A program made the position numbers and the translations under genes. Of a stretch of 64,000 nt of DNA, positions 17,674-58,220 are shown piece by piece. Location: contig NC_059434.1 in assembly GCF_021028975.2 (NCBI RefSeq), forward strand, positions 74,834,001-74,898,000, given 5' to 3'. The DNA comes from Sphaerodactylus townsendi. Lineage: Eukaryota. Position 1 is the stretch's first letter; the number at the start of each line of letters is the position of its first letter. Under the pieces are notes generated by a model. The model saw nothing but the letters and a program-made list of their open reading frames with translations, searched no databases and had not been told where the DNA came from.

Positions 17674-17888
17674 TCATGACAGACCAAACTTTTCATAGTG
17701 CTCCAGTGCAAACAGGAACATTTCTCGGAGAACATCTTGGCTACTATATCTTGGAAGAATGAGGTTTCGATTACAGGTGCAGGCTACAGGATACCACTTG
17801 TCTGGATCTTCTTTTCTGGCATCCGAAATTGTAAATTTGAACGTTTCCATCCCTAGACCTGGAATGCAGTTCGTTCCTGTAAGAAAAG
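17674..17888 (-). CDS. HERC5: HERC5-like exon 24 (HECT C-lobe, catalytic Cys codon 17773-17775, stop)
   Basis: AFLTG...YPVACTCNRNLILPRY...EKFGLS*; Phe at position -4 as in HECT ligases. Confidence 0.95.
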
Positions 17889-20800
17889 CTGAGGAAACAA
17901 TACAAATTGAATAAGGGGCAGCTGGCAAATAACCTTTTAAAAAATGGAGTAAAAAAGATGCACACGGACGAAGAAACGTGGGCCTGCTTCATATGTGTGC
18001 ACAGGGTACAGAAGCACAGCTGCAAATAGCAGATATGCACCAGGAAGGTCAAGCCAATCACAATCATGCATGTTGACCATTTGCTTACACAAGCACAATC
18101 ACGCTTATATTAGTTGATTATTGAGAGCAGTTTTATCCTGCCTTTCTTCCAAAAACTCAAACCGGAAAAGGGAAGAGGATAAATAAATATATTTATTTAT
18201 ATACCCCGTTTCTCCCCCATTGGGATTCAATGCAGCTTAGGACAAATTCTTCCCTCTTCCATTTTCTCACAACAGCCCTGTGAGGTAGGTTAGGCTGAGA
18301 ATTTGTGATGGGGCCAAGGTCACCTAACAAGTTTCCGTAGTAGAAATGGAGAATCAATCCCAGGTTGGCTAAGGTCTTAGTCCATAATGCCAGACTGGCT
18401 CTTTTATGTGCCCCTTACACATTTCCCTCATTTGCATTCATTGAAAATGCTGGGGGGAAGAATTAGGACTAATAAAAGGAAACACTTCTTCACACAACGT
18501 GTGATTGGTGTTTGGAATATGCTGCCACAGGAGGTGGTTATGGCCACTAACCTGGATAGCTTTAAAAAGGGCTTGGACAGATTTATGGAGGAGAAGTCGA
18601 TCTATGGCTACCAATCTTGATCCTCCTTGATCTCAGATTGCAAATGCCTTAGCAGACCAGGTTCAGGAGCAGCAGCAGCAGAAGGCCATTGCTTTCACAT
18701 CCGGCATGTGAGCTCCCAAGGCACCTGGTGGGCCATTGCGAGAAGCAAAATGCTGGACTAGATGGACTCTGGTCTGATCCAGCAGGCTAGTTCTTATGTT
18801 CTTATGCATTTTATTCTCAGAAAGGCCCTGTGAAGTAGGTTAGAATACCAAAGTTACCCAGTGAGTTCATGGCACACAAAGATCTGAATCTAGGTCTTTG
18901 TACAACAATCTAATCATTTCACCCCACCAATAATGGTGTGGGATTCTCATATGTAACTTCTGTACTGCTTAATGTGTCATGTTAATATTTATACTATGCT
19001 TCACTTCTTTGTTCCACATCCAAATAAAATCTAAATGTATTGGTTACTGAATGTCCTATTTTATTAATTATATGGACTCCCTAAGCATAATCCGTCTTGA
19101 GTCCTATGATAAAGGCAGATTGCAAATAAATAAATAACTTGATTATGCTCTCTTTTTTTTGTTACAATATCAATATCAATATTATTCTTTATTGTTATGG
19201 TTTCAGTGATGTACCTTTGTAATTAAAATGAAAAATGTAAATAAATAATAAAGTAAATAAATGATTACCAAGAAAATCCTTCTTCTTTTCTTCTGGAAGG
19301 TCATGAAACACAGCCCAAAAATTCCTGATTGTCTCATCTGACTTTTCATAGCCATTGTATCGAGCATTCTGTCACAGAGAATAAAAACAGTCCTGGTCTA
19401 TTTATCTTTCAGTATAATTTTATATAAACCAATATGCATGGCCTACCACACGCTCAGCACAGTTAGTTTGGTCATTGGTTTGCGTTTATAGAAAGAGCCA
19501 CTCCCCACAGTACAAACTGACAAACCCAGGTTTGGACAATAAGTGTATGCTTGTCAGAAAGTTGTGGGCAACCCCAGCAGCCTATTGAATGATACCTGCA
19601 TGATTATCAAGACTCCAAGGCCCCAGGGATTCTGAACGTGAGATGCCAGAACTCATTTCTGGCCAAAGGATCAGCTTGATCAGCAAAGTAAGTTTCTTAA
19701 TCCCATGAGGCCAAAAAAGGCCAGATAATACACCCTGATCCCTGTAGGAGCTTACATGCCAGCCTTATTCACCAGTATGAGGCTACTGAGTGCTGTGCAA
19801 AGATCTTCTGAGGGCTAGTTCAAGACAACCACCAATAAACTACTCTGTGCAGTTCAAATGATGCATCCCAGATGTTGCAGAGCATGCTGGGTTTTAAACC
19901 ATGGCTAAAGCAATGCTACTTCTGTGCCTGTGAAAATGCTGCCATCCCAAGATACGTTTGGATTGCTTTTCCAGTTCAAGCCCTTCCTTAGGCCTGCCCC
20001 CTTTCAGGCCCCTTAAACACATGCAGAATAACGCACTTCCAATCCACTTTCAATGCACTTTGCAGCTGGATTTTACTGTGCAGAAAAGCAAAATCCATTT
20101 GCAGAAAATTGTGAAAGTGGATTGAAAGTGCATTGTTCTGCATGTGAGGAGTATTGTTCTGCATGTGAGAGTATTGACTCAGCTCATACACCTGTACATT
20201 TTCTCCCGAAGACTTGAAATTACTGCTGGTGAAGGTTAAAGAAGAAACATGCCAAAGCAGGACTATGGCTGAACATCAAGACAAAGAGTAATGGCTATTG
20301 GGGCAAAACTCAGCTTTAAGGTTGACAATGAAGAAATTGCTCGATTTCTATTCCTTGGCTCCATCATCAACCATAATGGAGACTGCAACCAGAAATCAGG
20401 AGTACATTGTGACTGGGAAGGGCAGCCATAAAGGAGCTAGAAAAGTTTATTAAATAACAGGATATGTCACTGGCAACCAAGATCAAGACAGCCAGTGTGG
20501 TGTAGTGGTTAAGAATGGTGGATTCTAAACTGGGTTTGACTCCCCACTCCTCCACATAAGCTGCGGACTTTTATCAGGTGAACTGGATTTATTTCCCAGC
20601 TCCTCCAAATGAACCCTGCTGTGTGACCTTGGGCTAGTCACAGTTCTTTGGAACTCTCTCAGCCCCACCTACCTCACAGGTTGTCTGTTTTGGGGAGAGG
20701 AACAGAAGGGTTTGTAAATTGCTTAAGCCCCCTTACAGGAGAGAAAGACAGGGTATAAATCCAAATTGTTATTCTTCTAGTATTTGCTACTTCTATGTAT

Positions 20801-23800
20801 GGGTATGAAAGTTGGAAAATGCTGTCAGGAAGTAAGTAGATTTATTTGAAATATGGTGCTGGACAAGAATGGATACTATGGACCGCCAAAAAAGACAAAT
20901 CAGTGGGTTCCAGATCACATCAAGCCTCAACTCTCCTTAGAAACTAAAAAGACTATTGTACTTTGGTCACATATTGAGAAGACAAGAGTCACTCGAAAAG
21001 ATAATAATGCTAGGACAAATCGAAGACAGCAGGAAAAGAGAAAGACTCACCATGAGAAGGATTGATTCAATAAACGAAAGCCTTAGTTTGCAAGTCCTGA
21101 GCAATGACTTCTGGAAGTCATTAATTTATAGAGTTGCCATTAATTGGAAGCAACTTGACGGCACTTGACACCAGGGACAAAGTGAGGGGGAATTGCGCCC
21201 GGTGCGCATATGCGCCCACGCCCCTCCAAGCCCCCGTCCATCCCGGAATGCCCCCAGAATGCCTCTGTCAGGGCACGTGCCCGGTGCGTCATGTACCCCC
21301 CGCTCCCTTGGCACTATGCCACTGCTCACTGCTCACTGCTCACACTGCCACAGCCATTTTAACACATAAAAGTGATGAGTGCATGCATTCTTCATAATAC
21401 AAAAAGTTACTTACTATTGGTGGAAATTAGGTATGTACTAAACATGCCTGAAGGTAGCAATAAGGACCAGTGCAGAAAGAGTCAAAACAGCAAGGACTGC
21501 AATACAGATGCTTCACTGCCCAATTCTATCAAATATATTTCACTGACTGCTTAATTCAGCTACACATACATGCACACACGGTTTATGCTCATTGTTACCT
21601 TTTCTAGTTGTTCCCAATTGTAATTGGTCTGCCCAAGCAGAAGTAGGCGGAGCTCAGTAGGAAGGAAGACGTTCCACTTTTTAGTTTGGCAGCCTCTTGA
21701 AAACCCATCCATGAAATTCTTAAACTGCTCTTTAACAGAATCGTTGAATATGTAATTCACATAGGCATCAACGTATTCTTTTCTGTAAACAAATTGTTCA
21801 GCCGTTTTATTTATTTACTAGGTTTACTCATCTTTTTTTCCTTGCAAAATATCTAACCTCAAAATAACAGCCTGGATCCAAAAGGTAATGGTGGCACCTA
21901 GGTTACCATCAGAATACTGAAGCAGCACTTAGTAGCTTTGGGTCAAAGACAATTTAAGCCTCCTGTTAGAAAATCTTTCACCAAAGGCCCCTAATTGCCA
22001 CTGAGTTTGAAAATATCAAGGTTCAGCATCAAAGCTGTCAAAAAGGGCATTAATACCGTGTTTCCCCGAATATAAGACAGTGTCTTATATTAATTTTTGC
22101 TCCCAAAGATGTGCTATGTCTTATTTTCAGGGGATGTCTTATTTTTCTGTGTTCTGTTCGTCGGGCATGCTTCCAAACAAAAACTTTGCTATGTCTTACT
22201 TTCGGGGGATGCCTTATATTTCGCACTTCAGCAAAACCTCTACTATGTCTTATTTTTCGGGGATGTCTTATATTAGGGGAAACGGTATTTGAGCTTGACT
22301 CATTGTTATCTTAGCAAAACACAAAGCCACAAGCTTGCATTGGCTGGGATAATGCATATGCTTGGGTAGAAGAGTTTTTGCTGGGCAGAATTGCTGCTGC
22401 TTCTTGCATTCACCATCTGCATATTCCCCTAGCCAGAGGCGTGTCTCTAGGCAACCCCCTACTGTGCCTTGGAGCAGGGCATGGCAGGGCTCCACCTCCA
22501 CCCCCAGCTGCCGCCCCCCACCCCCGCCTCCCAGCCGGCAGTCCCTTGTGCCCTCCCTCCTGGGTGGAGCCAAGGGCTCCCGAAGACGACAAGGCAGGAG
22601 GACTTCCTGCTGCCTTGTCATCTTCCTGGTAACGTGAAGGCCGATTTTGCACCCCCTACGCGACCAGATTAGTGGCACCCAGGGACAGAGGATACCCCTC
22701 GTCCCTAGGTAAATACGCCACTGCCCCTAGCGATTTTCACAAGTCCCTTCCTTCTTCAAAGTCTGATCTGAAGAGATGGGGTGGATGACCAGCAGGAGAG
22801 ACCTTTGCAAGGGACTTCTGGGGAGAAGGATTAAACACATGCCTCCCCTGCAAATTTCCCCTGCATCAGCATTAGGAACGTCTCTTTCCCCCAGATACAA
22901 CAATCATCTTAAAACAAATTGAAAACCTTGCCTGTTGTACTTAGTGACAGGAATGTTGGCACCATTTTCTTTCAATTCAACAGAAACTTTACATCCTCCT
23001 TCTTCTTTCAGTACCTCAATAAAGAGAGAGGTAAAATCAAAGCTACTGTGGATCATAAAAACATTATTACAATTTACTTTGATTATACTCTGTCTTGCTT
23101 CCCAACTGAAACCGAAAGAGGTGTGCATCATTCTCTATTCCTCCATTTTTATCCAGCTTTTAAAAATTCTGAATGTTGCATGCAGGCATGTCAGCAAACT
23201 GATCAGAAAAGTCAAAGTGCCTACATGTGTATGCCACAAATCAGGGCTATGAAGAGGGCATCAATATGTCTTACTGTGAAATCCAGCATCAAGCTTTCTA
23301 AGATGTCATCATACTGCTCATCCAAGACTGCTTGAAGACACCTAATGGGCAAAACAGCAAAGTGAAATACATAAAATGCAAGTACTTAGGAATAGTTGAA
23401 ATCAGAGACCCCCAATCTTCTTGCACCTTTCGTATTTTGAGGAAGAGAATGGTAAGTGTCACTCCAAAATGGCTGTTATAGAAGCTGAAGCCAAACCCAA
23501 AATGGCTGTCTCAGGAGGTGGAGCTGAATGGGGTACCTCCCCCCTTGCACCTCCTGAGAAGAAGGAAAGACTGAAGGGGAAATGGACCCACACACTAAGG
23601 AAAGTCCTGGTGCTTACCAATCTTCCCTATCTTCTAGCAGAAAACTGGTTCATTTGAATGAGGACAGCCAATAACAAGCTTTGCCTTACAACAGCCCCAT
23701 CCATTTTATGAAAGGTTTGGCAGGTACCAAGGGAAGCACTGCTGAGCGCCACGATGCCGATGGGCATCATGTTGGAGAACCCAGAGTTAAATGCAACTGG

Positions 23801-26800
23801 CGTCTGACTAGCCCAGTGGTTCTCAACCTTCCTAATGCGGCGACCCTTTAATACAGTTCCTCATGTTGTGGTGACCCCCAACCATAAAATATCTGTACCG
23901 TGGGAACTTAATCTGGATGCTGATCAGTCTTAGGCAACCCCTGTGAAAGGGTTGTTTGACCCCCAAAGGAGTCACGACCCACAGGCTGAGAACCGCTGGA
24001 CTAGCCGAATAATCCTACGCAGACTTATTCCAGCCTTTTTAAAGGCTTAGCCTAAAGTAACTCTGCACAGAATTGCACTGTAAGCATGCTTAATATTGCC
24101 GCTCAGTTATGGAGTTAAGTTACAGTTCTGATTCCCTGTTCCTACAGAGAAAGATTTGTCAAAGTTAAGGACCTTGTAAAGTCCATGTGACTCTGAACAT
24201 AAAAACACAGAAAGAACGCTTGCTCCAATAATTGTTTTAATGTCCGGATCTATGGAATATTACTCCACACAGTGTAGTGACTAAAGCGTCAGACTAGCCA
24301 AATCAGACTAGCCGGGTCAGGGAAATCCAAGTTTGAATCCCCACTTGTGCCACTAAGGCCGCTAGGTGACACTGGGCCAATCATCCACTCTCAGCTTGAC
24401 CTACCTCACAGGGTTGTTGTGTGGATAAAATGGAGGAGAGGCAAATGATGTAAGCCACTTTGGCTCTCCCCTGGAGTGAAAAGTGGGATACAAAAGTAAA
24501 ACAAACAAATGAATAAATCCCAATACTCCGCACCTTCCTTCTATAGGAGAAAGCTCTTTCAAATCTTCCAGAGTCAGTGGAACATTTGCCATCTTCTTGA
24601 ACAGAGCGAGAGGGAAAGGGAAGGCAGCTATCTTCTTATTATAGAGTGCCATTCCAAATATATTCCCAATCAGAAAATGTACGTCTTCCTCTGATGGTAC
24701 CTAGTTTGAAAATTTAGCATACGTAAAATGCAGTATTAGCTTTTTGAATGGGCAGAAAGAACATCAAGTTGTAAAAAACAGCTATGCTTGAGCACCTTAT
24801 AGGCCAACCAGATTTTTGTGGTAGAAGTTTTCAAAAGTAAAAGCTCCCTTCATCGAACAGGGCTTGAATCTAGATGTTCTACTGCAGATAAACATAGCTA
24901 CCCTCTGACCCTATAAGCCTTTTGACAGTGTAAGCCTTTTTTTACAGAAAGAAGTTCTTCGGTGGAAGAAGAAAAGCCTCCGCATTTTAAAGAGGTCCCG
25001 TCAGCTATCAGCAACACTTTTGCTTTTGTATGGTTGCACTTGCCATTTTGTAGGCCCCAGGAAACAAAATGGCGGGCGCAACTGTACAAAAGCGAAAGTG
25101 TTGCTGACAGCCACCCGCAGCACTATAAAAGCTCTTTTATCAAAGTGCTGTGTTTAACGTTGCAAAAGATAATGGCTTTGACAAAGCCGGCACTTAGATA
25201 TGATTCTTTAGTCTTAGAAGAGAATTGAAAGGTGGGGGAAGGCAAGCTCCAGGACCCAGACGGAGCACTCCATAAAAGAAAGGTCTAGGAAGATGTGGCT
25301 AATACACATCTCCTCTGTTATCTTTTTGTGGAAAAAGGTATAACAATTGTCAGGTTTTTAAGCCCTCTAGTGGTGGGGAAGGAAATTACGAGGCAAGAAA
25401 AATGCAGGAAACACTGTGGTGCAAACGCTCTGTCGCTGCTGTGGATGCTTCACAGAATCATCACCATGCGGAAGCAGCCAAAGCAGCCCAAGACAGGATC
25501 TTGGGACCATGTATCTGGAGAATACAGGGATTGACCCTGCAACCATCTGCATGCGAAACAGACGCTCTGGCACTGAGCTGACTACTCCCTGAAAGGAAAA
25601 CATTCCCTTTTTGGTCTTCCTCTTTGGGAAGACAAATGGGAAGACAGAGGTCCTGAGTTCTGAAAGTCAGAACTGAGGACCTCTGACCTACAAAATCAAT
25701 TCACTGACATTTGACAGGTTGCTATTGACATGCTGGAGATCCAACGACAGATCTCCCAGCATCACATCTGGTAATCCTGGATGCTAGATCAGGAAGGCTG
25801 GCACCTGATTCTGCAAAACATGCTCCCCTAGCTAGTAAATAACAGCAGTGGCGTAGGAGGTTAAGAGCTTGTGTATCTAATCTGGAGGAACCAGGTTTGA
25901 TTCCCAGCTCTGCTGCCTGAGCTGTGGAGGCTTATCTGGGGAATTCAGATTAGCCTGTACACTCCCACACACGCCAGCTGGGTGACCTTGGGCTGGTCAC
26001 AGCTTCTCGGAGCTCTCTCAGCCCCACCTACCTCACAGGGTGTTTGTTGTGAGGGGGGAAAGGGCAAGGAGATTGTCAGCCCCTTTGAGTCTCCTGCAGG
26101 AGAGAAAGGGGGGATATAAATCCAAACTACTACTACTACTACTCTTCTTCTTCTTCATAAGAAGCATAAATAACTGCAGCATGGAAGCAGAACCATCTTA
26201 CCTGGCTGGAGAACCAAATCAGATGGGACTCTTCAAACAGCTGGAAGATCTGTGCTTCTGGAGCACACAGTTCCCTTCCAAGGATTGTGAAGAACTCTTG
26301 GGATGGCCCCCCATCATCAATTCCAGGTTCCCCAATGAAACACACCTGAGAAACCCAATAACGGTCAGATTATTTATACAAATGTGAGCAGAATTAGTAA
26401 CGGAAGAAATCTCTGTCCTACTTTTTGACCTTACATAGGTCCACAAAAAGAACTGTCAAGCTGTAGCCAATTTATGGCAACCCAGTAGGGTTTTAAAGGA
26501 AAGAGACTAACAGAAATGGTTTGCCGTTGCCTAGCTTTAGATAACAACGCTGGCATCGCTTGGCCTCCCATCACAGTACTAACCAGGGCTGACCCAGTGA
26601 CCCTGCTTAGCTTTTGAGATCTGATGAGAGCAAGCTAGCCTGGACTATCCAGGTCAGGGAGGCAGCATGGGTTACTGGGTAAGAGCAGCAGACCCTAATC
26701 TGGAGAACCCGGTAAAACCAGGTAAAATTCTCTAATCTGGAAAACCAGGTAAATCTCCTGAACAAGAAACCTCCTGGGTGACCTCGCATTGTCAGGCCAC

Positions 26801-29800
26801 GCATTGGAAGGCGATGGCATATCACCTCTGATCATCTATGCCTATTCGCAAGTCAGTGATACAGCCCAGTTCATAGTAAAAACCGAAACGTGTGTCCTCA
26901 GACTATCCATCTGGTGCGTTAGAGCAAAGTCCTCTTGGATGAGTCTCACCCTCGTGCAAGTGTGTAGAGGAAACCGAGCCCAGCAAGGGTCTTCTCAGGA
27001 GCAAACCCGGAGAAGAACTCGCATATTTCCACATCCACAAGATTGGGCATAGTCAACTGCAACGCAGCTCTGGAAGCAGTTCCCACTGAGCACAGTAAGG
27101 CTTTCCCAAACGAAGCGTGCCTAGAACTGCAGATCTCTGTTTCGTGTACTCCGCAGAAAGCCCGCCGGTTTTGCACGGCTTGACTCCCACTGCGGCTCTG
27201 CGGCGCCGACCAGGAACCCCAGAGCAGCTCCAGCAGCAGTTCAGGGACTGTTTTGCTTGCCGGAGCAGGAAATATTCTGCTTGCACAACCGGGTTGCCTC
27301 CCTCCGTCCTTGCAGCGGCTGCGGCGGATCATGCTGGCCCTTCCCGGCCTCCGCCTCCTGGCTCGCGCTTGTTGGTGGCGGGCAAACCGGCAGACGGCTC
27401 TAGCTGCCCGGGCTCTCTGCGTCGCCGCCCAGGACGGGCCGGCTGGGTCAGGACAGCAGCAGCAGCGGCCGCCCTTGTCGCCCGCCCTGCTGGACATCCT
27501 GGTGTGCCCTTTGTCCAAGAAGCCGCTCAGGTCAGCCTCGCCTTCCTCTCCGTCGCGCCCTGCTAGCCCCTGTTCTCTGCTCCTAACTTTGCAGGCCCCC
27601 CCCCCCCCCCGTGCTTCGTGCACCTCTGATTTCTGCTTGCATGCAAATCCTGCCTTACGTGTCTCAGATGGCTCCGAAGGGAGAAATCTTAGGTCTACTC
27701 AGAAGTAACACCATTTTATTCAGCGGGGTTACAATCCTTTTTAGGATTGCATCGTAAATCCGCCTCTTCCTTTCCCCCCCCCCCCCCCTCCCTCCGCCGG
27801 TACTCCATTATGGCCCTTTTTGTTCCCTTTGCTATTTTCCCCCCCCCCCCCCCCCTTTGCAACCGCCACCCTCTTTTCTTTCCCTTCCAGGGACTACTTT
27901 CAGTTTGCGAGCTCTCTCTCCCCCCCCCCCCCTTCGCGTTCGGATTTCTGGGATATATCACATTTACTCCAAAGGGGAGCATGTCATTTGTTTCTTCCTA
28001 AAGCTATGCATGCTGCAATTTTGATTTACTGTATTGGCAAAGGCTTGCAGGGCTGAAATTAACTATTATGAGTTTTGCGGGTTATATGGCTGTGGTCAGG
28101 TAGTTTTTGTTCCCAAAGTTTTGCCCGCACTTTAGGAGTGAAAACTACCAGACCACGTCCACATAGCCCGGAAAACCCACAACAATGGTACACTTTGGAG
28201 CCATCTTGGTGCATCAGTGCCAGGCTATAAAGTGGAACCTATGCCAGCGGAGGAGGCAAACAGCACCCTGGCACAGTGGATGATGGTCTGGAGGTGTTCA
28301 TGCAAGTGGAGTCTGCTTCCCCATCAGGCTTTGAGTCGGGGAACGTCCCCTTCCCCAGCCATAGACTTACACCACCAGAAAGTGTGGTTGGTGTAAGCCT
28401 GCTTGGCCTATGAGGCCATTTGGGCAGCAGGAGGAGGGTTTTTGAATCTCACTCCTTCCTGTTCTGCCCGAGGCCCCTCCACCACCCCAGTCTGGATTGG
28501 GCTGCTAGTATGATTGGCACCCAGTGAGATGTACAACAGAGTGATTAGAACCCAGCTCTCTTACATCCAGTGCCCTTGCTCTCCCATGGTAGATGCACGA
28601 TATACCTAGGCAACTGTGATAAGGGTCATGAAAAATGACATGCTGCAGTGGTCTTCCTCCAAACTGTGCCGGTTAACATTTTGGGGCTCCTCAGCCATTT
28701 GTCAAGAGCTTCGTGATGAGCAACTGAACAATGGCAAGCGAGCTTCCTTGACAGACTGCTGATGTTTCCCTGTGGTGCGCAGGCACACAAGTGGGATGTG
28801 CGTGCCCCCACTAGAACATCCCATTTGCATGTGGCACTGGTGAAGCCAGAACTGGTTTGTGTGACTGAAACATTCCAGCAGTTGTCTAAGGATTCCTCAG
28901 CAGGCAACTGGAAAACTCCCTGGAGGTGAACAGTTTGAATAAAACATAGGCATGCCAGACAAGGGGACCATCAACAGAGTTCTCACATCCTGGTTTTTCT
29001 CAATTTGCCCAGCTGCTGAGGCCCATTAATGGTGCTCTTCTACAGGAACAGATCATAGCCAGGGTTAGATTGGTCTGGACCTATGGGGGGCCTTTTCTGC
29101 TGCTGACTCCAAACTGTGGTGTGGTGGTTAAGAGCAATGGACTCTAATCTGGAGAACCAGGTTCGATTCCCCACTCATCCACATGAGTGACGAACTCTTA
29201 TCTGGTCAACTGAATCTGTTTTCCCCTACTCCTACACATGAAGCCTGCTGAGTGACCTTGGGCTATTCACAGTTCTGTAAGAACTCTCTCAGCCTCACAA
29301 GGTGTCCATTGGGGGGAGGGGAAAGGAAGGAAGTGTTAAGCCGCTTTGAGACTCCACACATTAGACAAAAGTGGAGTATAAATCTAGCTCTTCTTCTTTA
29401 GAGGCAAGACTGGCACTACCCATCAAGGCCTTCTGGACAGTCTTTTAAGGACCTACAGAGATCATTTGATTTAGATAAAGGCTGAGGGATCCGTTCCCTA
29501 CTGATTTGAGAGCTGTTGCCAAGTGTGGTTTTATGAACCCTTTTCATGGGGTGGAGTTGTATTTACATATGACTTGGTGAGGAAGCAGTTAAGAACTCAA
29601 CTAAAAATTGCTACTTGTTGCTTTAAATCAGTAAATTCAATTTATGAAAACACGTAACACTGCTTTGTACTGAAAGACCACTGGAGCTTGCATGGTGTAC
29701 TGTAGCAGTAAAAAGTGGTGGACTCGAATCTGGAGAACTGGGTTCAATTCCCCACTCCTACACATGAAGCCTGCTGAGTGACCTTGGACTAATCACTGTT

Positions 29801-32372
29801 CTCTCAGAACTCTCTCAGCCCAGCATACCTCACAAGAGGTCTGTTGTGGGGAGAGGAAGGGAAGGAATTTATAAGCCGCTTTGAGAATCATTAAAGGTGG
29901 AGAAAAATGGGATATAAATCCAAACTGTCTCCATACTCTCGATACTGGCTGCTTTGACTGGCAGCTGCTGTCCAGGTAGAGAAAGGTTAAGAACAAGCCA
30001 GCTGGATCAGACCAGAGTCCATCTAGTCCAGCTCTCTGCTACTCGCAGTGGCCCACCAGGTGCCTTTGGGAGCTCACATGCAGGATGTGAAAGCAATGGC
30101 CTTCTGTGGCTGTTGCTCCCGAGCACCTGGACTGTTCAGGCATTTGCAATCTCAGATCAAAGAGGATCAAGATTGGTAGCCATAGATCGACTTCTCCTCC
30201 ATAAATCTGTCCAAGCCCCTTAGTGGCCATCACCACCTCCTGTGGCAGCATATTCCCAACACCAATCACATGTTGCGTGAAGAAGTGTTTCCTTTTATTA
30301 GTCCTAATTCTTCCCCCCAGCATTTTCAATGAATGCCCCCTGGTTCTAGTATTGTGAGAAAGAGAGAAGAATTTCTCTCTGTCAACATTTTCTACCCCAT
30401 GCATAATTTTATAGACTTCAATCATATCCCCCCTCAAACGTCTCCTCTCCAAACTAAAGAGCCCCAAACGCTGCAGCCTCTCCTCATAAGGAAGGTGCTC
30501 CAGTCCCTCAATCATCCTCGTTGCCCTTCTCTGCACTTTTTCTATCTCTTCGATATCCTTTTCAAAGGATATTTCTTTCTTCAGGTTTCTCATCTCCTGT
30601 TGCCTGATCCTTTTAAGGGAAGGTCCCAGGGATTGATCTTCTGCACGCAAAGCACAGGCTTCGCCACTAAGACACCAATGCTTTTTGTATTTACTAGGTA
30701 TGAAGAATCCACCAACGAATTAATTAACGAAGAGCTGGGCATTGCCTATCCCATTATTGATGGCATTCCTAATATGATACCACAGGCAGCAAGGATGATT
30801 GCCAAGGAGAACCGAGAAAAGGAACCCGAACAGACCTAGACGACAGTCCTCTTAAAAAAGGGACAGTGAAAGATACACGGAGGCAGAAAAATGTTCCCGT
30901 CACTTCCTACTATGACTGTACTCGTTCCACTGTTGTCGTTAGCTGGTCTGTTTTATTCAGCCAGTGTGGATGAAAACTTTCCCCAGGGATGCACAAGCAC
31001 ATCCAGCCTCTGTTTCTACAGTCTGCTGCTTCCCATTACAATCCCCGTTTACGTGTTTTTCCATCTCTGGACCTGGATGGGCCTGACACTCTTCCGCCAC
31101 AACTAGGATGCGGAGGGTCTGTTAGCAAAGAATATGGTAGCAGTCCACAACATGGTATCTTACAGATTCTAAAGTAAGGGACCACATAGTGAATTAAATA
31201 GATCTCCACAAAGGTGCCTCCCAAGTCTATAGAAGATCTGCATGCCTTTTAAGGAAAGCAACTTCCCAGTTCAACACTGGTAGCACCAAACCATATTTGT
31301 GAGAACCATTAAGCCTAGAAGAAACTGTGGGGTTGCAAAATGAAGTCCTGTGACGTATCACATCATGTGGACAAGACTGCCTTCATGGGCTTCACTTTCT
31401 CTCCCTTGTGTGCATGGGGGCGAGGGCTGAGATTGCCCCAAGCCAACCCTAACGGAGCCGACAAGTGAACACATTCAAACCATCTATCGAGTTCATTAAA
31501 AATGCTCTGTGTAAAGCTTGACAGACAGCTTTCTCCCTTACACGTTCTTGAAATCAGGATTTGCATACCTTCTCCTTCGCCAGCAACGCACAGAAGAGCA
31601 GTCTTTCATGCAGGGATTTTGTAAAGTGAGAAGTTGTCTTTTGTGCACTAGATATTGAGCTCTCAGGTTACAGATGGTTTAAAACCAGGTGTAGCAGTAA
31701 GGAGGCATACTCTCTTGCATTTCGCTACCCTGTAGGGTTGCAGATATCCGGCTGTTTGAATTCATGTATGCAAAAGGATTGGAATTCACACACAGTGCTG
31801 TGGAAGTGATCAGCACTGGATGAAAATGTTACCGAATAGCAAACTTTTAGTTTTTAAATAAAACCACCTTTAAACCCAGCAGTTTTCCACAATGACTGTA
31901 CTTGGGAACATTTGGCTGACTGCTGACACCATCTGGGAAATCATGAAGGACCAAAGGAGTCCAGGTGCAATCCACTGGGTGCTGAGAGAACCAGATCTCT
32001 GCCCCCAGTTTAACTGAGGTTAATACCACTTAAATCCTGTTCAGGCGAAGTTGCCACTGACTTGGCCCATTGATTACAACGGGTTTAAATGCAGCGGGCA
32101 CAAATCATGTTGGGGCTCTTGTGCTTTTCCACAGTTAAACACCAAAGACATGTCAATGCAGCTTTATCAAGTGTAACTGATGTCTGAGACAGTTCTTAGA
32201 CTTAAAGCTCTGCTGCTTCTAACGATAAGCTGGAAGTTGTGACATTTATTTATTTCTAATATATGTGCATAACCTTTCTTCCAGACAACTGGGACCTGCT
32301 CATGTCAGGGACATTGTGGGACAACCCTCCAAAATTAAGAGAGAGAGAGAGAGAGAGTGAAAGTTTGAGAGC

Positions 32373-32404
<32 letters not shown>

Positions 32405-35400
32405 AAGGGAATGCAACCCAACCTGAGAAACAAGGTAGGAACCAAAAAGGTTGAGAAATCTAAAACTGTTCCTTAAAATGTATGAAATAAATATTTTATT
32501 GCATTCTAAGCAAAAAATCACGAAACAAACTTTTCAAACAAAAATATACATTCAGATCTGAGAACAATAATACAATATCATGAACTATATTGCAAACAAC
32601 CACAAAGCCTTAATTTTAATAATCCAATGCACGGATTTCAGGATGAAACACATAAAAGACCTGACGCGTTTTGATCTAATTGGATCTTCTTCAGAAGTCA
32701 TTGAAACAACCCACGCATATATAAAACTTCTCACAATCCATACAAACTTATTTACAGTTCAGCATGAGTTATATAGCTAAAAGAAACAATAATTGGTGTT
32801 CCCGTAAATATCTACAGTATAGTCGAAGGCTTTCACGGCCGGAATCACTGGGGTCCTGTGTGGTTTCCGGGCTGTATGGCCATCTCAGATCCTCTGAAGA
32901 TGCCAGCCACAGATGTAGGCGAAACGTCAGGAGAGAATGCTGCTAGAACACAGCCATACAGCCCGGAAACCACACAGGACCCCATCTACAGTATATATTG
33001 TGAATCTCATAAGTTTCAATCCAACAGGTAACTTTTAAATAGAACATCACTCATAAGACAAAATAACAGCAAACGATGTTCCCATAGATGTCTATGGTTT
33101 GTATTATGAATCTTACATGTTTCTATTCAGGTAATTTTTCCACTGAACACTACTTGGCAGACCTGCCTTGGACTATGTTTCTTGCTGCCTCCTGGATATA
33201 TTCTTGAACCACACAGTCCAGGGCAGGAACACCATTCACAATATATACTATAGATACCTACAGTGATACCATTATTAAAATTAAGGCTCTGTGGTCGTTT
33301 GTAATATATTTTATGATATTGCAGCACTGTGTGATCTCAGATATGAATGTGCATTTTTGTCGACAATTTTATGTTTAGTGGGGGCTTTTTGCTTAGAATA
33401 CAGCACAGTGCAATTAAATATATATTCCATACATATTAAGGGGCAGGTTTTAGACTTCTCAACCTGTGCATGTGCTACACAACTGCAACATGTTTCCCTG
33501 GAGCACAGAGCAAGACATGAATGTTTTGTGCCTCAATCAGAGGAAATGAAGCATAATTTCTTACTTGGAAGAAGAGCAGGAATTGGTTTGCTTTCATATT
33601 CCTTAGACACATCCACGTATCTTGCACCAGATATTGTCTCCTCACAATTAGTTCTATGTTTGGACTAAGGTTTGGCTGCAAGGACACAAATATTAGGTTA
33701 ACAGACTTCCTAGTGTGTTCTGCAGTCATGTCAGGCACCTGTGGGGATGTACCTACCCAGCTGGACATCCAATTCAATAAAACACAGTCTAGATTATGCA
33801 GTAGGATCTTTGCTTCCATATCCAAGATACAAGGGACCTGAATGACAACCTGAAAGGTATACTGAAATGACAAAGGGAAAATTAATCTGAAAAGTAACAC
33901 ACACATTTAAAAATCGGGTTGTTAGAAATGTAGGGTTGCTGTTTCCCTCCTATCTGGCATTTGTGGCCATCAGAAAATAAAATACATTCACACGTTAGTG
34001 CTTTTATTTCAAACATGGCAGCAGAGTCAGACAATCATCTTCCCACCTGCCAATGTTTGATGGTTTCTGGAATCATCCATTGATAGGAATCCAGTCCTTA
34101 AAAGTCAATGTATGAACAACCCCCTGCTCATCTGCTTTATAACATTCTTGACTGAAAGCAGCACTTGGGGACAACAGCAGAGCCCACGAGAAGTTCAAAG
34201 GCCTGTCAGAGAAAGCCAAATGGTTTTCTACCTATCCTATCAGTGAGAAAGAACATCATAATGCTCAGATGCAGAGGGAAAGTCCCAAGGTCTATGGAAT
34301 TGTTGCATTTGTTAGGAAGAGATGGAGCAAAGAAGCTCTGAGTAGTATCAGGGACCTGTGTGAGCACTGATAGCACAATGGATGGAAGAAAATCTGGCCA
34401 GGTATACAGCCTTTTAACAGCTGAAGGGTGCTGACTTTTGCTGCTATGGGTGGGTTAAAGCTCTAGAATTTCTGGACAGACTATCAAAATATGCCCCTGT
34501 CAGCTATCTCTCTTCGAGATCATAGAAGGGTGTGGTGGAAGTCATATATGATAATATGTTAACAGCTCCCACCAACCATTTAAATGGGCACTAATAAGTC
34601 AAATCTAAGCATTAAAAAGTGTCAACCTTACCTTCACTTCCAACCGCTTTGATTGAAATATTCTGACTACCTGTTTACAAATATAATAGAAAAATCAAAT
34701 ATTTAGCACATGCTGACATGAGGGGTCTTACAGTTTTCTCCTTTGAAAGCTACACACTCAAGAACTAGGTGAATGTTTGATGGTGTCATGTTGAAAGGCC
34801 CCTAGTAGCATTCTGTTTGGCTTGCCTTATTCTAACAAGAAACATGCAAAGAACTGGCTGATTGGTGCCAAACAATGTAAAATTTAACCTCCCATTCCTT
34901 GGCCTTGCTGCCGCCGGCCCCCCTACCCCCCCGCTTGTCAGGCTATAATGTTGCTACAACAACAGGCATTGATTCCCCTTCTCTGCCTCACCGAAAAGAA
35001 CCCTGCCAGGGTCTACTCATGCATTACAGTCTCACAAATCAGATTGCCATATTTGATTCCTCTGACAAACAGTCAAAATTTAGATAAGTGTAATGAGAAC
35101 TGGAGCTCTGGACTGCAGTCAGAAATTTGGGGGAATGTGATTTATTTTGAGAGGCATAATTAGTGGCTCCTGCTTTGATACTTATGTTGGAATCATGAAC
35201 CTCAACACAGTAAGAACCTCCATAGGACTGCTTGCTGTACACCTGCCTGTTGTTGTACTTACTTGCTCAAAGTTTTGTGTAGGGCTCAATTTTGGAGCAC
35301 ACAGCATTTCTTTAACTTCAGGAACATAAAAGTTCCTTTCCTGGATCTTGAAACCAGTCCTGCTATTTACCTACACAAACAGCCAAACAAGAAAATAACC

Positions 35401-38400
35401 CATGAATATATTATCTAATAATAATAGTAATACTTTTCTGCTAAAAAGCACTGCACGATAAACTCAAATAAGAACACTATGGCTCATTCCACACATGCAG
35501 AATAATGCACTTTCAAACTGCTTTCAGTGCTCTTTGAAGCTGTGCGGAATAGCAAAATCCACTTGCAAACAGTTGTGAAAGTGGTTTGAAAACGCATTAT
35601 TTTGCGTGTGCGGAAGGGGCCTATAATATTAAGCCAAAAGTCCAAATGCAAAACAAAGAATCCTTGATAACACTTTTCATAAGGGCAAGTTCTACAAAGG
35701 CAGCCATGTCAGTTTGCTGTAGCTAAAATAAGAAAGAGTCTTGTGGCACCTTAAAGTTTAAGAATTTATTGTACATTTTTGATAAGTCAGAGCTCACTTC
35801 ATCTGGCACTGCAAGTCATTTGTTTTGTAACAGTTTAGCCCCCTGAGAAAGAAGCATTTTCTTTTAAAGACAAGGAAATGAAAAGTCTCTTTATCAGTTC
35901 CAAATTGACACATTAAGCACTAAACCACAAGGTTGCATTGAGATTACTATTTTCTAAAGCAAATCTCTACAGGTTACTGCCCTCTGACTGAAGAGAAGAC
36001 AGATATTTATTTTCATGTATCACATGAAAACCTTCTGTCCCTGCCAAAGATCACTTATATTTATTTTTAAGATGCTTATTTAAAATTAATCTAATCACTC
36101 CTGAAACGGTTGAATATGAAAGAATTACAATGAAACAAAAATATTTGCATATTAGATGAAATCAGAATTAGAAGGACACACATAATGTGCATTATCCTAT
36201 CTCTCTTATGATTAAATGATAAAATTAAATTTCCTTAGATTCTCAACAAAATGCTTTGAAAAAGATCAGATACTCTCATGTAACCCACATCTGTGAGATT
36301 CAGGGGTGTTTATATAGGCCCAATTACATTAAATTCACAACTCCATCAAAACCATTTAATTCATCTCCTCAAATATATGAAGAAGCATGGCCAAGCTTTC
36401 AACTAACTTTCCCACAGGAATACTGCAAACCAATGATTTGCTTTTTCCTCACATTGCAAAATGTATTTCTGGGCCAGCATTTAATGTTGAAATGGTAAAA
36501 GTAAATTCTCAGCCCTGCTTTGTTCAACTGTTGACAAATAGAACTGTTATACTTTAGCAGTCTTGGTGAAGTGATTCTCTCACATCAAGGCCAGCCTCTT
36601 TGTTGAGGCCAAAGCTTGGGGAGAATGCCACACAACTAGTCCTCAGTCACCACTGCATGGCACTGAGAAAAGCAAAGTTGGCAAGAAGAGGGCATACCAA
36701 AGAGGACATGCCTAATGAGCATCTCAGCATAACATATGGGCACTTCCTTTACAGAATCTCTGTGGTCCAATTGAGACTGCAAATGTACTTCAAGGATCTG
36801 TTAGCCAATGGTTAAAATAATTTTACTCTAATCTGGAGGGAAGAACTTTAGTGTTTGATTTTCTATTTCTTGACATGAGTGGTGGACTCTTATCTGGTGA
36901 ACTGGGTTGTTTCCCTGCATGACCTTGGGCTAATAGTTCTCTCAGAACTCCCTCAGCCCCACCAACCTCACAAGATCTCTGTTGTGGGAAGAGGGAGGGA
37001 AAGAACTTTGTAAGCTGCTTGAGACTCCTTACAAGAGACAAAGGCAGGATAAAAATCCAAACTCCTCCTCTTCCTTCTTACCAATGCTATGTTTAGCAGC
37101 ACAGAAAATGACTCAGGGCTTCAGTTCAAGGGTTTCACCTACCTCATATAGCACTTGTAGGATCAGGAGAGGGCTAGGTGCATTCCAGTATGTGTCTACC
37201 ATCTCAGAATTTCTCGTCTGTTCAATGATGGAATATATCTTGACCCTGGAAATTCTTTGATAGATGTCCACTAGATCCTTGAAGAATGGGATGTCTAAGC
37301 TGGACCACAGAGATTCTGTAAAGAAAAAGCCTTATTATATACTAAGCTGGTTAGGTACTGCCATCTGCTGAGAATTGTTCTCTGTGGTATCCCTTCCCTT
37401 TAATTAGGATACACCAAACTAGAAAATCAAATTAATAAAATAAATAAAAAACAATTTCCATGTTTTGTAGGGCAGGTGTTTTCACCATGTATTCCCACTT
37501 CACATTTGGACCTTGCAGGTGGATCCTGCTGCCAGCCCCTTCCTTACCAAGTATCTGCCTGTCTTCTGTCTCAAGATCCAAGATGATTTGTGCCAACTGG
37601 CTGAGCAGCGAGTCCGATTGGTGGTCCTTCTTCCTCAAAATTACAGGCAGGATGAGGAAGACTCTGAGCGCTTCAGGGGAATTAGCAGAATAACGCAGGG
37701 ACGGTGCAAGCTTTTTAACAGCATTTGTCACCTTGAAGACAGAGGAAAATGGAATGTCATGCAGCTATAAAACATTTGATTTTCACCATTTTGTGGCGGT
37801 AAGATTAAACGCAATGTATTGTATCATCCGACAACATTTTTTCTCTCCCTGTCCCTGCCCCCTTTTCTTTTCTTTTTTTTTTAATAGGCAGCTGATAAAG
37901 ATTTCTGGTAACAAAAGGGCTGCAGTTAGGCACAGGAGAGAAAAAGAAAAGGCCAAGGCCAATGGGGCAAAACAAAATTAAAATATTTTATTACTCAGTT
38001 AAAATTCCCCAAATTCCCTACGGCCGTTTCCGCACGGGCGGAAAATGACGGCCTGGAGACGGTAAAAACGCCGTCTCCAGGCTGCCATTCGCACGGGCGG
38101 CTGGCCCGCAGCCGGCGTATTCCGAGAACGCTAAGAAGCGTTCTTTTGGGAATACGCCCGCCCGTGCGCCGCTACCCGGCCGAGAGCAGCGGCTTCACGC
38201 AGCGCCTGCCCGACCCGGCAGCGTATGTCCCTGTAAGCCTCCGGCGCGTCGCTGAGGCCTGGGGACCACGCTTAACCCTGCGCCCGCTCGAGCAGGCGTG
38301 CAGAGACCAGGGGGGCGTGTCCCCGAACTTCGACAACGTGCCGGAAGGCCCAGATGCTTTCGAGCGTCGTCTTGAACCAGGCGCTCCGCGCCGACTGCCG

Positions 38401-41400: not shown

Positions 41401-42979
41401 GAATCAACCGCGCGTCATCTTCCGGGTTCCCCACCACCCCACCACCCCGCGCCAAGCGCGGGGTTTGGGAAAATGTTGCTGTTTTTCAAAGAGCAGATTT
41501 GACGCGCGCCAGGGAGGCGGAAGAGCGGCAATTTCTGCGCAACTTCTTTTAATGGAAGGCTGGGGATATGGGGAGCATACTGGAACCACGATCTGCAGCT
41601 AACCCCGCGGCTAATGGTGAGTGGGAAGCGACCCATTGCTTAATCTTACTTCTCTTGCCCAATCCAGCTCATGATGCACACACAGACAAGGACTGGGGGA
41701 TGGCTTGGCTGAACAATCTTTGCAGCATCACGGGATGAATATACATAGCCAAGTCGTAGATTACTAGACTGGGCCTCAACTTCTGATCATGGATTCCCTG
41801 AAAAGCTACATGCCACTATGCACAGACTGAATATTATGTTGTTGCTTTTGAATTTAGTATTATTGGCCAAATGTGGCAGGGACACGGATTCTTTAAAAAC
41901 ATCAGGTGTGCAATAGTTGTAGAGGAGATACGTACTGTATTTTGTTAGAATCCAAATCAGAAACCCATTTATCTATCTCTTCCTCTTCTATTCTGGCAAG
42001 TGTCTGGTTTAAACTGGCATATGAATTCTGGGGAAAAAAGACACAACACACACAAAATGATCCCAGAACTTTTTTGAGATCCCTCCACTGGAGATTTGAA
42101 ACCCAAAGTGGATATGTCTCCTTGCATTTTGTTGATGTTTCCCCCGATCCCTGATAATGCAGACATTTATGGCATTAAAGCACACCAAAAGAAAAAATGA
42201 CTTTTACAATCAAATTATAAGGCAAACTATGGACCATTCCAGTTTGTAGCACAATAAATACCTAGCAGTTATTTGAGTGATGTTCAATGACCAGATGGCT
42301 TGCGTCAAATGACACTTATAGTGAAGGTTTTCCCAATGTCCCCAGCCAGATATGCCCCTCCCTGGTCCCTCTGCGCTGTGGGCCAGATCAGGATCAGGCC
42401 TTTGTGGCATTTTTAAATGTCCAAGCTCAGCCCTAAAATGGCATCAGTTTTCACAAGTCAGACCTGTAAATGCCACAACATCTAATTTGATCCTAAGGCA
42501 GAGAAGCAAAGCTGTAGCCATTTCCCCACCGCCCAGAGCCAGTGGTGGGATCCAAAAATTTTAGTGACAGGTTCCCATGGTGGTGGGATTCAAACTGTGG
42601 TGTAGTGCCAATGGGGCTGGGCGGGGCATGACGGGAAGATGGCCGGGCATTTCACCAGGGTGGGGCATTCACCAGAGAAGACTTTATTGGCAGGGACGCG
42701 GCAGCTGCGCAGCCGATCGCCCAAGATTGGAAGCGAATACGCGGAAGCGAAGGCGCCACGCACACCGGTGCACCTCATGCTAGACTGCTTCAAGTTCTGC
42801 ACGCTACTGCTGAGAGGAGGGGCGTAACTAAGGCAAAAATCACGACAAAATCGCAAGTTCGCCGCCACCGCCCACCGACGCACAAATAATTAGTAACCTA
42901 CTCTCGGGAACCTGTAAGAACCTGCTGGATCCCACCTCTGCCCAGAGCCCTTCGGGGGAGGGGCAGTATATAAGACTAA

Positions 42980-43010
<31 letters not shown>

Positions 43011-47473: not shown

Positions 47474-47508
<35 letters not shown>

Positions 47509-58005: not shown

Positions 58006-58220
58006 TTATGATAGACCAAACTTTTCATAGTGCTCCAGTGCAAACAGGAACATTTCTCGGAGAACATCTTGGTTACTATATCTTGGAAGCCGAAGGTATC
58101 GAAAACAGGTGCAGGCTGAAGGATACCACTTGTCTGGATCTTCTTTTCTGGATTCCACAATTGTAAATACGAACCTTTCCATCCCTTTACCTGGAATGCA
58201 GTTCGTTCCTGTAAGAAAAG
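58006..58220 (-). CDS. Tandem HERC5-like paralog (copy 2), last exon (catalytic Cys codon 58105-58107)
   Basis: Gap-free alignment to 17674-17888; AFLTG...YPSACTCFRYLRLPRY...EKFGLS*. Confidence 0.93.

What the first reader, a model, noticed from the sequence alone, without database searches (positions are those of the whole stretch)
17674..17888. Tandem HERC5-like paralogs diverge almost only by amino-acid changes in the catalytic HECT C-lobe exon
Seen: a gap-free codon alignment of 17674-17888 against 58006-58220 gives 11 replacements involving 18 nt: L>K, T>R, K>V, S>V, D>E, A>S, V>S, N>F, N>Y, I>R, S>N. Six are multi-nucleotide codon changes. There are only 2 synonymous changes, plus TGA>TAA. 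The two preceding exons show the opposite pattern (exon 23: 3 nonsynonymous/5 synonymous; exon 22: 6/7). Four replacements flank the catalytic Cys: YPVACTCNRNLILPRY vs YPSACTCFRYLRLPRY. Established: the HECT C-lobe carries the thioester Cys and influences modifier and chain-type specificity; human HERC5 is the interferon-induced ISG15 ligase. Inference: positive selection on the active-site surface, meaning different UBL/chain specificity between paralogs or an arms race with viral antagonists in a reptile antiviral ligase family.
Basis: partly seen in the sequence, partly recalled or inferred. Interest (0 to 1): 0.85.

Follow-up and report, generated by a model that had tools for sequence, protein, structure and literature searches.

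The report
Fast-changing active-site exon in duplicated gecko HERC5-like genes
Two neighbouring copies of an antiviral-type HERC5-like ubiquitin-family ligase gene in a dwarf gecko differ in their last exon almost only by amino-acid changes clustered around the catalytic cysteine; the pattern is real and suggests adaptive change, as already described for mammalian HERC genes, but the statistics do not yet prove it.

Summary
The terminal HECT exons are on the minus strand at 17674-17888 (copy A) and 58006-58220 (copy B). They differ at 21 nt: 11 replacements (18 nt, six multi-nucleotide codons), 2 synonymous changes and TGA/TAA. Contigs of independent sequencing runs carry both versions.

The window is Sphaerodactylus townsendi. 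A and B are intact, lineage-specific tandem paralogs.

- Pairwise omega is 1.77 but is not significantly above 1 (P=0.31).
- The exon's nonsynonymous divergence (0.103) equals the intron divergence (0.096).
- The conserved core is frozen, with 1 and 3 lineage-specific changes at 153 invariant HECT codons against about 17 expected.
- Multi-nucleotide codon changes far exceed intron tandem substitutions (P=5e-4).
- Site models and a branch-site test on copy A are nominally significant (P=0.01-0.003). They fade to P=0.1-0.16 when double-nucleotide mutations are modelled.

The C-lobe exon is not unique: spacer exons 12-16 diverged as much.

By position, the changes match E2-facing residues of human HERC5 (F995, F999). 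They do not match its reported ISG15-selectivity residues.

Rapid evolution and duplication of HERC5/6, HECT domain included, is already published for mammals. This is a new squamate member of a known kind.

The parts
17674..17888 (-). Terminal coding exon of copy A (HECT C-lobe, 70 codons + TGA; first 2 nt complete a split Ala codon)
   Evidence: HECT C-lobe match to E6AP/WWP1/ITCH chains; contigs of runs X1, X2 identical
58006..58220 (-). Terminal coding exon of copy B (70 codons + TAA), 100% identical in protein to XP_048365976/XP_048365977
17773..17775 (-). Catalytic Cys codon (TGT, exon site 38) of copy A; followed by Asn (site 39) instead of the usual Phe/Tyr/Leu
58105..58107 (-). Catalytic Cys codon (TGT) of copy B, followed by Phe
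19269..19368 (-).
59902..60001 (-). Penultimate coding exon of copy B
21599..21782 (-).
62586..62769 (-). Antepenultimate coding exon of copy B
17674..53268 (-). Whole coding span of copy A (22 of the 23 coding exons of B are matched; the gene is called with a 994-aa product carrying RCC1 repeats and HECT)
58006..64000 (-). 3' part of copy B inside the window (last three exons and part of a fourth); the rest was read from L001
33757..33852 (-). Spacer exon 15 of copy A: the second exon with omega above 1 against B (13 N / 2 S, dN 0.19)

Best explanation
A HERC5-like gene (RCC1-like domain, spacer, HECT domain) was duplicated in tandem in the Sphaerodactylus lineage, and both copies remain under selection as working ligases. 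After the duplication, both copies replaced residues in the last exon at or above the neutral rate. The replaced residues lie in the beta-strands and loops that frame the catalytic Cys (C-4, C+1, C+3, C+5, the preceding strand at sites 15-23, and sites 11 and 49). The C-terminal helices, the catalytic Cys, the -4 Phe and every squamate-invariant residue stayed fixed. The most likely cause is selection for new amino acids on this surface. That would mean paralog specialisation of the trans-thiolation / donor-handling face, or escape from something that binds it, as proposed for mammalian HERC5/6. Shown: the pattern itself, its authenticity, the intact core, the excess of double hits, and the monophyly of A and B. 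Inferred: that the driver is positive selection, and what the surface binds.
For: The pattern is exact and is present in reads. A and B are sister sequences (bootstrap 100/97) and both are called as full-length genes. The core is under strong constraint: lineage-specific changes at 153 squamate-invariant HECT codons number 1 (A) and 3 (B), against about 17 expected if neutral. Gene-wide polarised N/S is 39/20 for A and 48/34 for B. Codons that are variable in other squamates evolve 3.9 times faster in the terminal exon than in HECT exons 17-22 (nt-level Fisher P=4e-4, codon-level P=0.04). Their pN of 0.18 exceeds the intron rate of 0.096 (P=0.009). Seven of 12 substitution events are runs of 2 or more nt, against 14% in 12,240 intron sites (P=5e-4; 0 of 393 intron windows reach this). 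Multi-hit codons are 6/13 here against 21/174 in other exons (P=0.004). Outgroup codons show hits on both lineages and repeated hits at sites 11, 21, 41 and 43. A B-type contig from a second organism carries yet another residue at site 41. Site models: M7/M8 P=1e-4, M8a/M8 P=0.01, M1a/M2a P=0.009. Branch-site test on A: P=0.003, with 7 of 12 flagged sites in this exon; it is still P=0.03 at a double-mutation rate of 0.02, roughly what introns imply. The AlphaFold2 model of B (C-lobe pLDDT about 90-95) puts the changes in or next to strands 941-945, 957-959 and 964-967 and none in helices 973-990. Mammalian precedent: HERC6 shows positive selection including the HECT domain, and codon 992 of artiodactyl HERC5 is flagged by MEME.
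Against: Pairwise omega of 1.77 rests on 17 N against 3 S and is not above 1 (P=0.31). The exon's pN of 0.103 equals the intron divergence (P=0.43). Counted as events rather than nucleotides, the rate at variable codons is not above neutral (P=0.19). When the double-nucleotide rate is fitted (about 0.05, which improves lnL by 8-12 units), the branch-site test on A drops to 2dlnL=2.0 (P=0.16), M8a/M8 to P=0.13 and M1a/M2a to P=0.10. The branch-site test on B is null. The differing sites are the most variable columns of the whole family (Mann-Whitney P=4e-5), which weak constraint also predicts. Only 9 sequences were used, with my own codon-model code and naive posteriors. There is no expression data.
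Confidence: 0.5

Rival explanations
1. Near-neutral drift. The eleven positions are simply the least constrained positions of the C-lobe. They drift at the mutation rate in both copies, and multi-nucleotide mutations (one event hitting two adjacent bases, nearly always nonsynonymous) inflate the nonsynonymous count. The low synonymous count is sampling noise.
For: The exon's pN of 0.103 is about equal to the intron rate of 0.096. pS of 0.060 is not significantly low (P=0.15-0.33). Ten of the 11 differing codons are variable in other squamates, and the sites rank 1, 3, 4, 5, 7... of 70 in family-wide entropy. The event-level rate is not above neutral (P=0.19). Adding a double-nucleotide rate improves every model strongly and removes significance, as described by Venkat et al. 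(10.1101/165969). Four of the 8 replacement events on the A lineage are tandem doubles (GT>AA, GA>TC, TT>AA, GG>TT).
Against: Introns of the same gene pair show tandem runs in only 14% of events, about 5% beyond chance, against 58% in the exon (P=5e-4). Variable codons in the other HECT exons evolve at about half the intron rate, not at it. Sites 11, 21, 41 and 43 were hit independently on both lineages, so at least two of the six 'multi-nucleotide' differences are not single events. The fitted double rate (about 9% of events) is two to three times the intron-derived one.
Confidence: 0.38
2. Copy A is losing catalytic function, and its C-lobe is decaying or has become a non-catalytic or decoy domain. 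Phe-to-Asn next to the catalytic Cys would be the sign. The replacement excess would then be relaxed constraint on one copy.
For: A carries radical derived residues at moderately conserved positions (R15T, V17K, F39N). The position equivalent to human F995 is modelled as contacting the E2. The branch-site signal is on A only. A's homolog of exon 10 is degenerate.
Against: A has a single lineage-specific change at 153 invariant HECT codons, against about 17 expected under neutrality, and none in the terminal exon. The catalytic Cys, the -4 Phe and the open frame are intact. The replacements are shared between both lineages (A 8 nt, B 5, unresolved 5). The A-type exon is kept in a second organism. 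The gene is called with a 994-aa product.
Confidence: 0.07
3. Artefact or recombination: an assembly or base-calling error, or short conversion patches copied from another HERC paralog.
For: The differences are clustered in short runs, as micro-conversion would give. The region is a tandem repeat of about 40 kb.
Against: Contigs from two runs match A exactly, and both types occur in a second organism. A diverged donor would bring synonymous differences too, but the ratio here is 18:2. The neighbouring paralog (gene C, L001:5700-6080) has none of A's or B's derived residues. No other copy of the exon lies in the window. The flanks show ordinary divergence.
Confidence: 0.03

Closest known systems
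Mammalian HERC5/HERC6 rapid evolution and lineage-specific duplication (Jacquet et al. 2020, PMC7775381; Paparisto et al. 2018, PMC6002735)
   Same: Same gene family and domain layout. Tandem or lineage-specific duplicates. The fastest divergence is in the spacer and, for HERC6, also in the HECT domain, with M8 classes of a few percent of sites. Here too the spacer exons are the most diverged (pN 0.113), and a HECT subset reaches omega 1.4-1.5. Codon 992 (C-2) of artiodactyl HERC5 is flagged by MEME, and its equivalent, site 36, has the top posterior here.
   Different: This is a squamate (gecko) lineage, a whole-gene tandem duplicate rather than a HERC5/6 chimera. The hot spot flanks the catalytic Cys in the C-lobe, which those papers do not single out. 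The statistical support here is far weaker (9 sequences, not robust to MNM).
Human HERC5 C-lobe determinants (preprint 10.1101/2025.09.26.678755)
   Same: By alignment through whale HERC5, site 39 corresponds to F995 and site 43 to F999. Site 36 corresponds to L992, and probably site 21 to P980. These are the four C-lobe residues modelled at the UbcH8-HERC5 trans-thiolation interface. Three of them differ between A and B, and the fourth is hypervariable in squamates.
   Different: The residues reported to make human HERC5 ISG15-selective (D987/P988/E1015, equivalent to sites 27/28/59) are identical in A and B, and site 59 is Phe rather than Glu. Squamate proteins have a 4-residue longer loop before the Cys, so the P980 equivalence is uncertain. 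The overlap of two secure positions is not significant by itself (hypergeometric P of about 0.11, my arithmetic). The human interface is itself a model.
False positives of branch-site tests caused by multinucleotide mutations (Venkat, Hahn and Thornton, 10.1101/165969)
   Same: The signal on copy A is carried largely by codons with two adjacent changes, and it disappears when a double-mutation rate is fitted.
   Different: Here the local mutational background can be measured in the introns of the same duplicates, and it is too low to give the observed share of double hits.

Membership tests
HECT E3 ligases (Pfam PF00632) | C-lobe with the catalytic Cys in the conserved (S/A)xTC...LP.Y context | tested here: met
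   phmmer of the exon against PDB chains aligns it to the C-lobes of E6AP, WWP1, WWP2, ITCH and HUWE1, with the Cys in register. TGT is present in both copies. The Cys is invariant in 40 family members (C961).
HECT E3 ligases (Pfam PF00632) | Conserved Phe four residues from the C-terminus (established knowledge: needed for transfer to substrate) | tested here: met
   Both copies end ...EKFGLS*, with Phe at -4.
Small HERC proteins (RLD + spacer + HECT) | N-terminal RCC1-like beta-propeller, helical spacer and C-terminal HECT in one protein of about 1000 aa | tested here: met
   Precomputed Pfam RCC1/RCC1_2/WD40_RLD plus HECT hits on copy B's protein and on the 994-aa product called for copy A. 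The AlphaFold2 model of B shows propeller strands at 20-366, helices at 383-637 and HECT at 644-990. Exons of A match B along the whole length.
HERC5 orthologs / ISG15 ligase | Position in the conserved HERC cluster next to PYURF-PIGY and another small HERC | tested here: met
   A second, divergent HERC lies upstream (1028 aa, L001:1-6080). PIGY is nested antisense in an intron of copy A at window 30891-31103. The single-copy gene of six other squamates shows the same arrangement.
HERC5 orthologs / ISG15 ligase | C-lobe residues reported to confer ISG15 selectivity in human HERC5 (P988, E1015) | tested here: inconclusive
   The Asp-Pro pair is kept (sites 27/28), but the E1015 equivalent (site 59) is Phe in both copies and is hypervariable in squamates. 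The loop length differs, so the equivalence is approximate.
HERC5 orthologs / ISG15 ligase | Interferon induction and conjugation of ISG15 rather than ubiquitin | not testable with these tools
   No RNA run was listed among the holders of the locus. No biochemical data exist for any squamate HERC in the papers read.
Genes under positive selection (arms-race paralogs) | dN/dS significantly above 1 at a class of sites or on a branch, robust to model choice | tested here: inconclusive
   Nominally significant without MNM: M8a/M8 P=0.01 and branch-site on A P=0.003. Not significant with the fitted double-nucleotide rate: P=0.13 and P=0.16. Pairwise test P=0.31.

The most novel reading that the evidence does not exclude
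After the duplication, copy A rebuilt the E2-facing rim of its active site (Phe to Asn at C+1, Arg to Ile at C+5, plus V17K and R15T) while keeping the rest of the HECT domain frozen. The two gecko paralogs would then use different E2~modifier partners, or one would escape or trap a viral antagonist that docks on the catalytic face. This would be an arms race fought at the active site of a HECT ligase rather than at its substrate-binding domain.
Probability: 0.15. Interest if true: 0.7.

Novelty: new member of a known kind. Interest (0 to 1): 0.4.

Why it matters
Small HERC ligases are interferon-linked antiviral effectors. Their rapid evolution has been mapped in mammals mainly to the RCC1-like blade 1 and the spacer. 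A young paralog pair gives a clean natural experiment: the catalytic-face residues changed while the core stayed fixed. It could show which C-lobe surface residues tune E2 and modifier handling, or are targeted by pathogens. It also extends the HERC duplication story to squamates. The case is methodologically useful as well, because the introns of the same duplicates calibrate the multi-nucleotide mutation rate that confounds branch-site tests.

Tried and rejected
1. Gene conversion as the cause of the low synonymous count: rejected. The flanking intron and 3' region are as diverged as the exon. The high identity of exons 17-19 is not mirrored in their introns (88.9%).
2. The neighbouring paralog (gene C) as a donor of the clustered changes: rejected, because it shares none of the derived residues.
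3. Pseudogenisation of A: rejected for the HECT core.
4. Branch-site test on B and on A+B: no support (P=0.38 and P=0.08).
5. Look-ups that failed. The isoform X2 protein and the Euleptes protein, which would be the best outgroup, are not on record as gene products. Euleptes could therefore be used only at the protein level.
6. RNA evidence: no RNA holders were listed, so expression of A and B is unknown.
7. Copy A's own annotated protein did not appear in the protein searches.
Copy A was handled exon by exon, by reference. The database protein of copy B (P0164) was used for folding. Codon likelihoods were computed on exon-wise alignments.
9. Complex prediction was not used: no binding claim is made, and no gecko ISG15 or E2 sequence was in hand.

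Full report
WHAT IS THERE. The gene lies on the minus strand. A sequence search against solved structures aligns the exon to the C-lobes of E6AP, WWP1/2, ITCH and HUWE1, with the catalytic Cys in register. There are 11 replacements using 18 nt, six of them multi-nucleotide, plus 2 synonymous changes and TGA/TAA. The counts for the two upstream exons (3N/5S and 6N/7S) are also right.

IDENTITY AND CONTEXT. Copy B's exon is 70/70 identical to 'E3 ISG15--protein ligase HERC5-like' of Sphaerodactylus townsendi. The locus fetched through that protein (L001, chromosome record CM037623.2) overlaps the window. It shows an array of a divergent HERC (1028 aa), then copy B (993 aa), then copy A (called product 994 aa). 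Copy A spans 53268-17674 of the window; only the last exons of B are inside it. I mapped the 23 coding exon blocks of B and found 22 of them in A. In six other squamates the gene is single-copy at the place read, with PYURF-PIGY nested antisense in an intron. In S. townsendi only copy A keeps PIGY (window 30891-31103), so A sits at the ancestral position. A and B are sister sequences in nucleotide trees of HECT exons 17-23 and of the terminal exon alone (bootstrap 100 and 97). The duplication is therefore lineage-specific.

AUTHENTICITY. Contigs of two runs of the same species match copy A with no difference across 17300-18161, and a second set of contigs there carries B-type letters. Two runs of a second organism, about 1.5-2% diverged in the flanks, hold an A-type version (at most 1 difference per ~110 nt) and a B-type version. 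The differences are in the DNA of independent samples, and the duplication predates the split of the two organisms. All runs were contigs and none is on record as RNA, so expression is unknown.

HOW UNUSUAL IS THE EXON? By Nei-Gojobori counting, the terminal exon has Nd 17.2 over 166 sites and Sd 2.8 over 47 sites, giving omega 1.77. The whole gene has pS 0.124 and omega 0.46. By region:
- RLD exons: pN 0.045.
- Spacer exons 12-16: pN 0.113.
- HECT exons 17-22: pN 0.030.
- Terminal exon: pN 0.103.
The exon is an outlier within the HECT domain (P=0.009) and against its two neighbours (P=0.006). It is not an outlier against the spacer, where exon 15 has omega 1.69. Omega above 1 is not significant on its own (P=0.31). 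pN equals the divergence of 12,240 aligned intron sites of the same duplicates (0.096). The immediate flanks are 7.9% and 10.4% diverged against 9.8% in the exon, so recent gene conversion does not explain the few synonymous changes.

CONSTRAINT IS INTACT. Of 153 HECT codons invariant in seven other squamates, only 1 changed specifically in A and 3 in B. About 17 changes are expected at the neutral rate, and the terminal exon contributes none for A. Polarised with two gecko outgroups, gene-wide changes are 39N/20S on A and 48N/34S on B. In the terminal exon they are 8/0 on A, 5/1 on B and 5/1 unresolved. Neither copy is decaying. An exon that evolves at the neutral rate overall while 30 of its 70 codons are frozen must be evolving faster than neutral at the remainder. 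In the 40 codons that vary in other squamates, pN is about 0.18 (P=0.009 against introns, P=0.08 against gene-wide pS). Such codons change 3.9 times faster here than in HECT exons 17-22 (P=4e-4 by nucleotides, P=0.04 by codons).

THE MULTI-NUCLEOTIDE CHANGES ARE THE CRUX. In introns, 14% of substitution events are runs of two or more adjacent bases, about 5% beyond chance. In the exon the figure is 7 of 12 (P=5e-4), and none of 393 matched intron windows reaches that. Multi-hit codons are 6 of 13 changed codons here against 21 of 174 elsewhere in the gene (P=0.004). Outgroup codons resolve the events as follows:
- Site 11: CAA changed to CTA in A and to AAA in B.
- Site 21: GAG changed to TCG in A and to GTG in B.
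- Site 41: ATC changed to AAC in A and to TAC in B.
- Site 43: AGG changed to ATT in A and to CGG in B.
- Site 34: a tandem double (GT>TC) on the B lineage.
Several 'double' differences are thus independent hits on both lineages. Four genuine tandem doubles remain on A: GT>AA, GA>TC, TT>AA and GG>TT. The B-type contig of the second organism has Phe (TTC) at site 41, a third state, and also differs from reference B at sites 49 and 51.

CODON MODELS. I wrote the code myself: GY94 with F3x4 frequencies, a fixed species-like tree, 9 sequences, 312 codons of HECT exons 17-23, and naive posteriors.
- M0 gives omega 0.32.
- M1a/M2a gives P=0.009, M7/M8 gives P=1e-4 and M8a/M8 gives P=0.01. M8 places 13% of sites at omega 1.54.
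- High-posterior sites occur in every HECT exon. In the terminal exon they are sites 17, 21, 36, 41, 43, 59 and 63.
- The branch-site test with A as foreground gives 2dlnL=8.9 (P=0.003), with 7 of 12 flagged sites in the terminal exon. With B as foreground it gives 0.8; with A+B, 3.0.
- Adding an instantaneous double-nucleotide rate improves all models by 8-12 log units. At its best value (about 0.05) the A test falls to 2.0 (P=0.16), M8a/M8 to P=0.13 and M1a/M2a to P=0.10. This is the behaviour described by Venkat et al. (10.1101/165969).
- At a rate of 0.02, roughly what the introns imply, the A test is still 4.5 (P=0.03).
The formal evidence for positive selection is therefore borderline. 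It depends on whether the double hits are mutational or selective, and the intron calibration favours the latter moderately.

WHERE THE SITES SIT. An AlphaFold2 model of copy B built from 40 homologs (mean pLDDT 84; C-lobe about 90-95) places strands at residues 941-945, 957-959 and 964-967 and helices at 973-985 and 987-990. The differing sites map as follows:
- Sites 21-22 are in the first strand, with 15, 17 and 23 at its edges.
- Site 34 is in the strand before the Cys.
- Site 39 is directly after the Cys.
- Sites 41 and 43 alternate in the strand after it.
- Sites 11 and 49 are in loops.
- None lies in the helices.
Family-wide, these are among the most variable columns of the exon (ranks 1, 3, 4, 5, 7, 12, 13, 15, 20, 24 and 42 of 70; P=4e-5). 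Both weak constraint and recurrent diversification predict that. I had no coordinates, so I could not test whether the sites form one patch.

COMPARISON WITH HUMAN HERC5. A 2025 preprint models UbcH8 L121/M123 against HERC5 F995, L992, F999 and P980. It attributes ISG15 selectivity to D987/P988/E1015, and reports that P988L/E1015M makes HERC5 a ubiquitin ligase. Aligning through whale HERC5, whose Cys falls at 996 (an offset of 2), gives F995 = site 39, F999 = site 43, L992 = site 36, P980 approximately site 21, D987/P988 = sites 27/28 and E1015 = site 59. It is a lead only: the human interface is a model, the loop lengths differ, and the overlap is not significant by itself.

WHAT IS KNOWN. 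Positive selection and lineage-specific duplication of HERC5/HERC6 are published for mammals. The spacer is the hottest region, and significant signals are reported in the HERC6 HECT domain. Codon 992 of artiodactyl HERC5 appears in the MEME list (PMC7775381; PMC6002735). The papers found by my searches do not treat squamates or the residues flanking the catalytic Cys. I file this as a new member of a known kind.

VERDICT. My odds:
- Selection-driven diversification of the catalytic-face residues after a young duplication: about 0.5.
- Near-neutral drift at weakly constrained sites inflated by multi-nucleotide mutation: about 0.38.
- Loss of catalytic function in A: about 0.07.
- Artefact or conversion: about 0.03.

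LIMITS. Only nine sequences were used. The best outgroup (Euleptes) was available only as protein. The codon code is my own. There are no RNA data and no 3D coordinates.

Noticed in passing
window 30891-31103 (+), inside the intron 26348-33562 of copy A: A PIG-Y open reading frame (94% identical to the Heteronotia protein) is nested antisense in copy A only. No match exists in the locus of copy B (L001). The single-copy gene of six other squamates has the same nested PYURF-PIGY, so A is the positional parent and B the daughter copy.
   Followed up: partly
window 39583-39698 (-): The homolog in copy A of B's coding exon 10 (19 codons plus split codons, 60 nt) carries several frameshifting indels, stops in all frames and an altered donor. 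A probably skips or replaces this exon. The 3' ends of exons 9 and 14 also fail to align between the copies.
   Followed up: partly
window 33562-37731 (-), exons 12-16 of copy A: The spacer exons are the most diverged part of the paralog pair (pN 0.113 against pS 0.137; exon 15 has 13 N / 2 S, omega 1.69). This is the same hot region reported for mammalian HERC6.
   Followed up: partly
window 17706-17885, contigs of runs X5/X7: In a second, about 1.5-2% diverged organism the B-type exon differs from reference copy B at about 3% of positions, mostly nonsynonymous (Y41F, N49S, D51N, plus CGG/AGG). The A-type exon is nearly identical. Either B keeps changing fast or that organism has a further paralog.
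   Followed up: no
L001:1-6080 (upstream of copy B, outside the window): A third, much more divergent small-HERC gene (1028-aa product) ends about 4 kb upstream of copy B. Its C-lobe reads ...LPEAQTCCHLLLLPPYST...GFGKQ* and shares none of the A- or B-specific residues.
   Followed up: partly
window 18252-18300 and the dispersed family at about 20490-20770, 25843-26156, 29115-29400, 36825-37078, 45050-45350, 49146-49445, 58330-58645, 61600-61910: An interspersed repeat family is scattered through the introns of both copies. Contig depth over 18252-18300 reaches about 10^5, so it is a very high-copy element.
   Followed up: no
window 43071-43148 and 38837-38947 (-), exons 8 and 11 of copy A: These two exons are 100% and 98% identical between A and B, and the intron piece around exon 8 is 94.7% identical, against about 80-91% elsewhere. 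This may be a small, more recent conversion tract.
   Followed up: no
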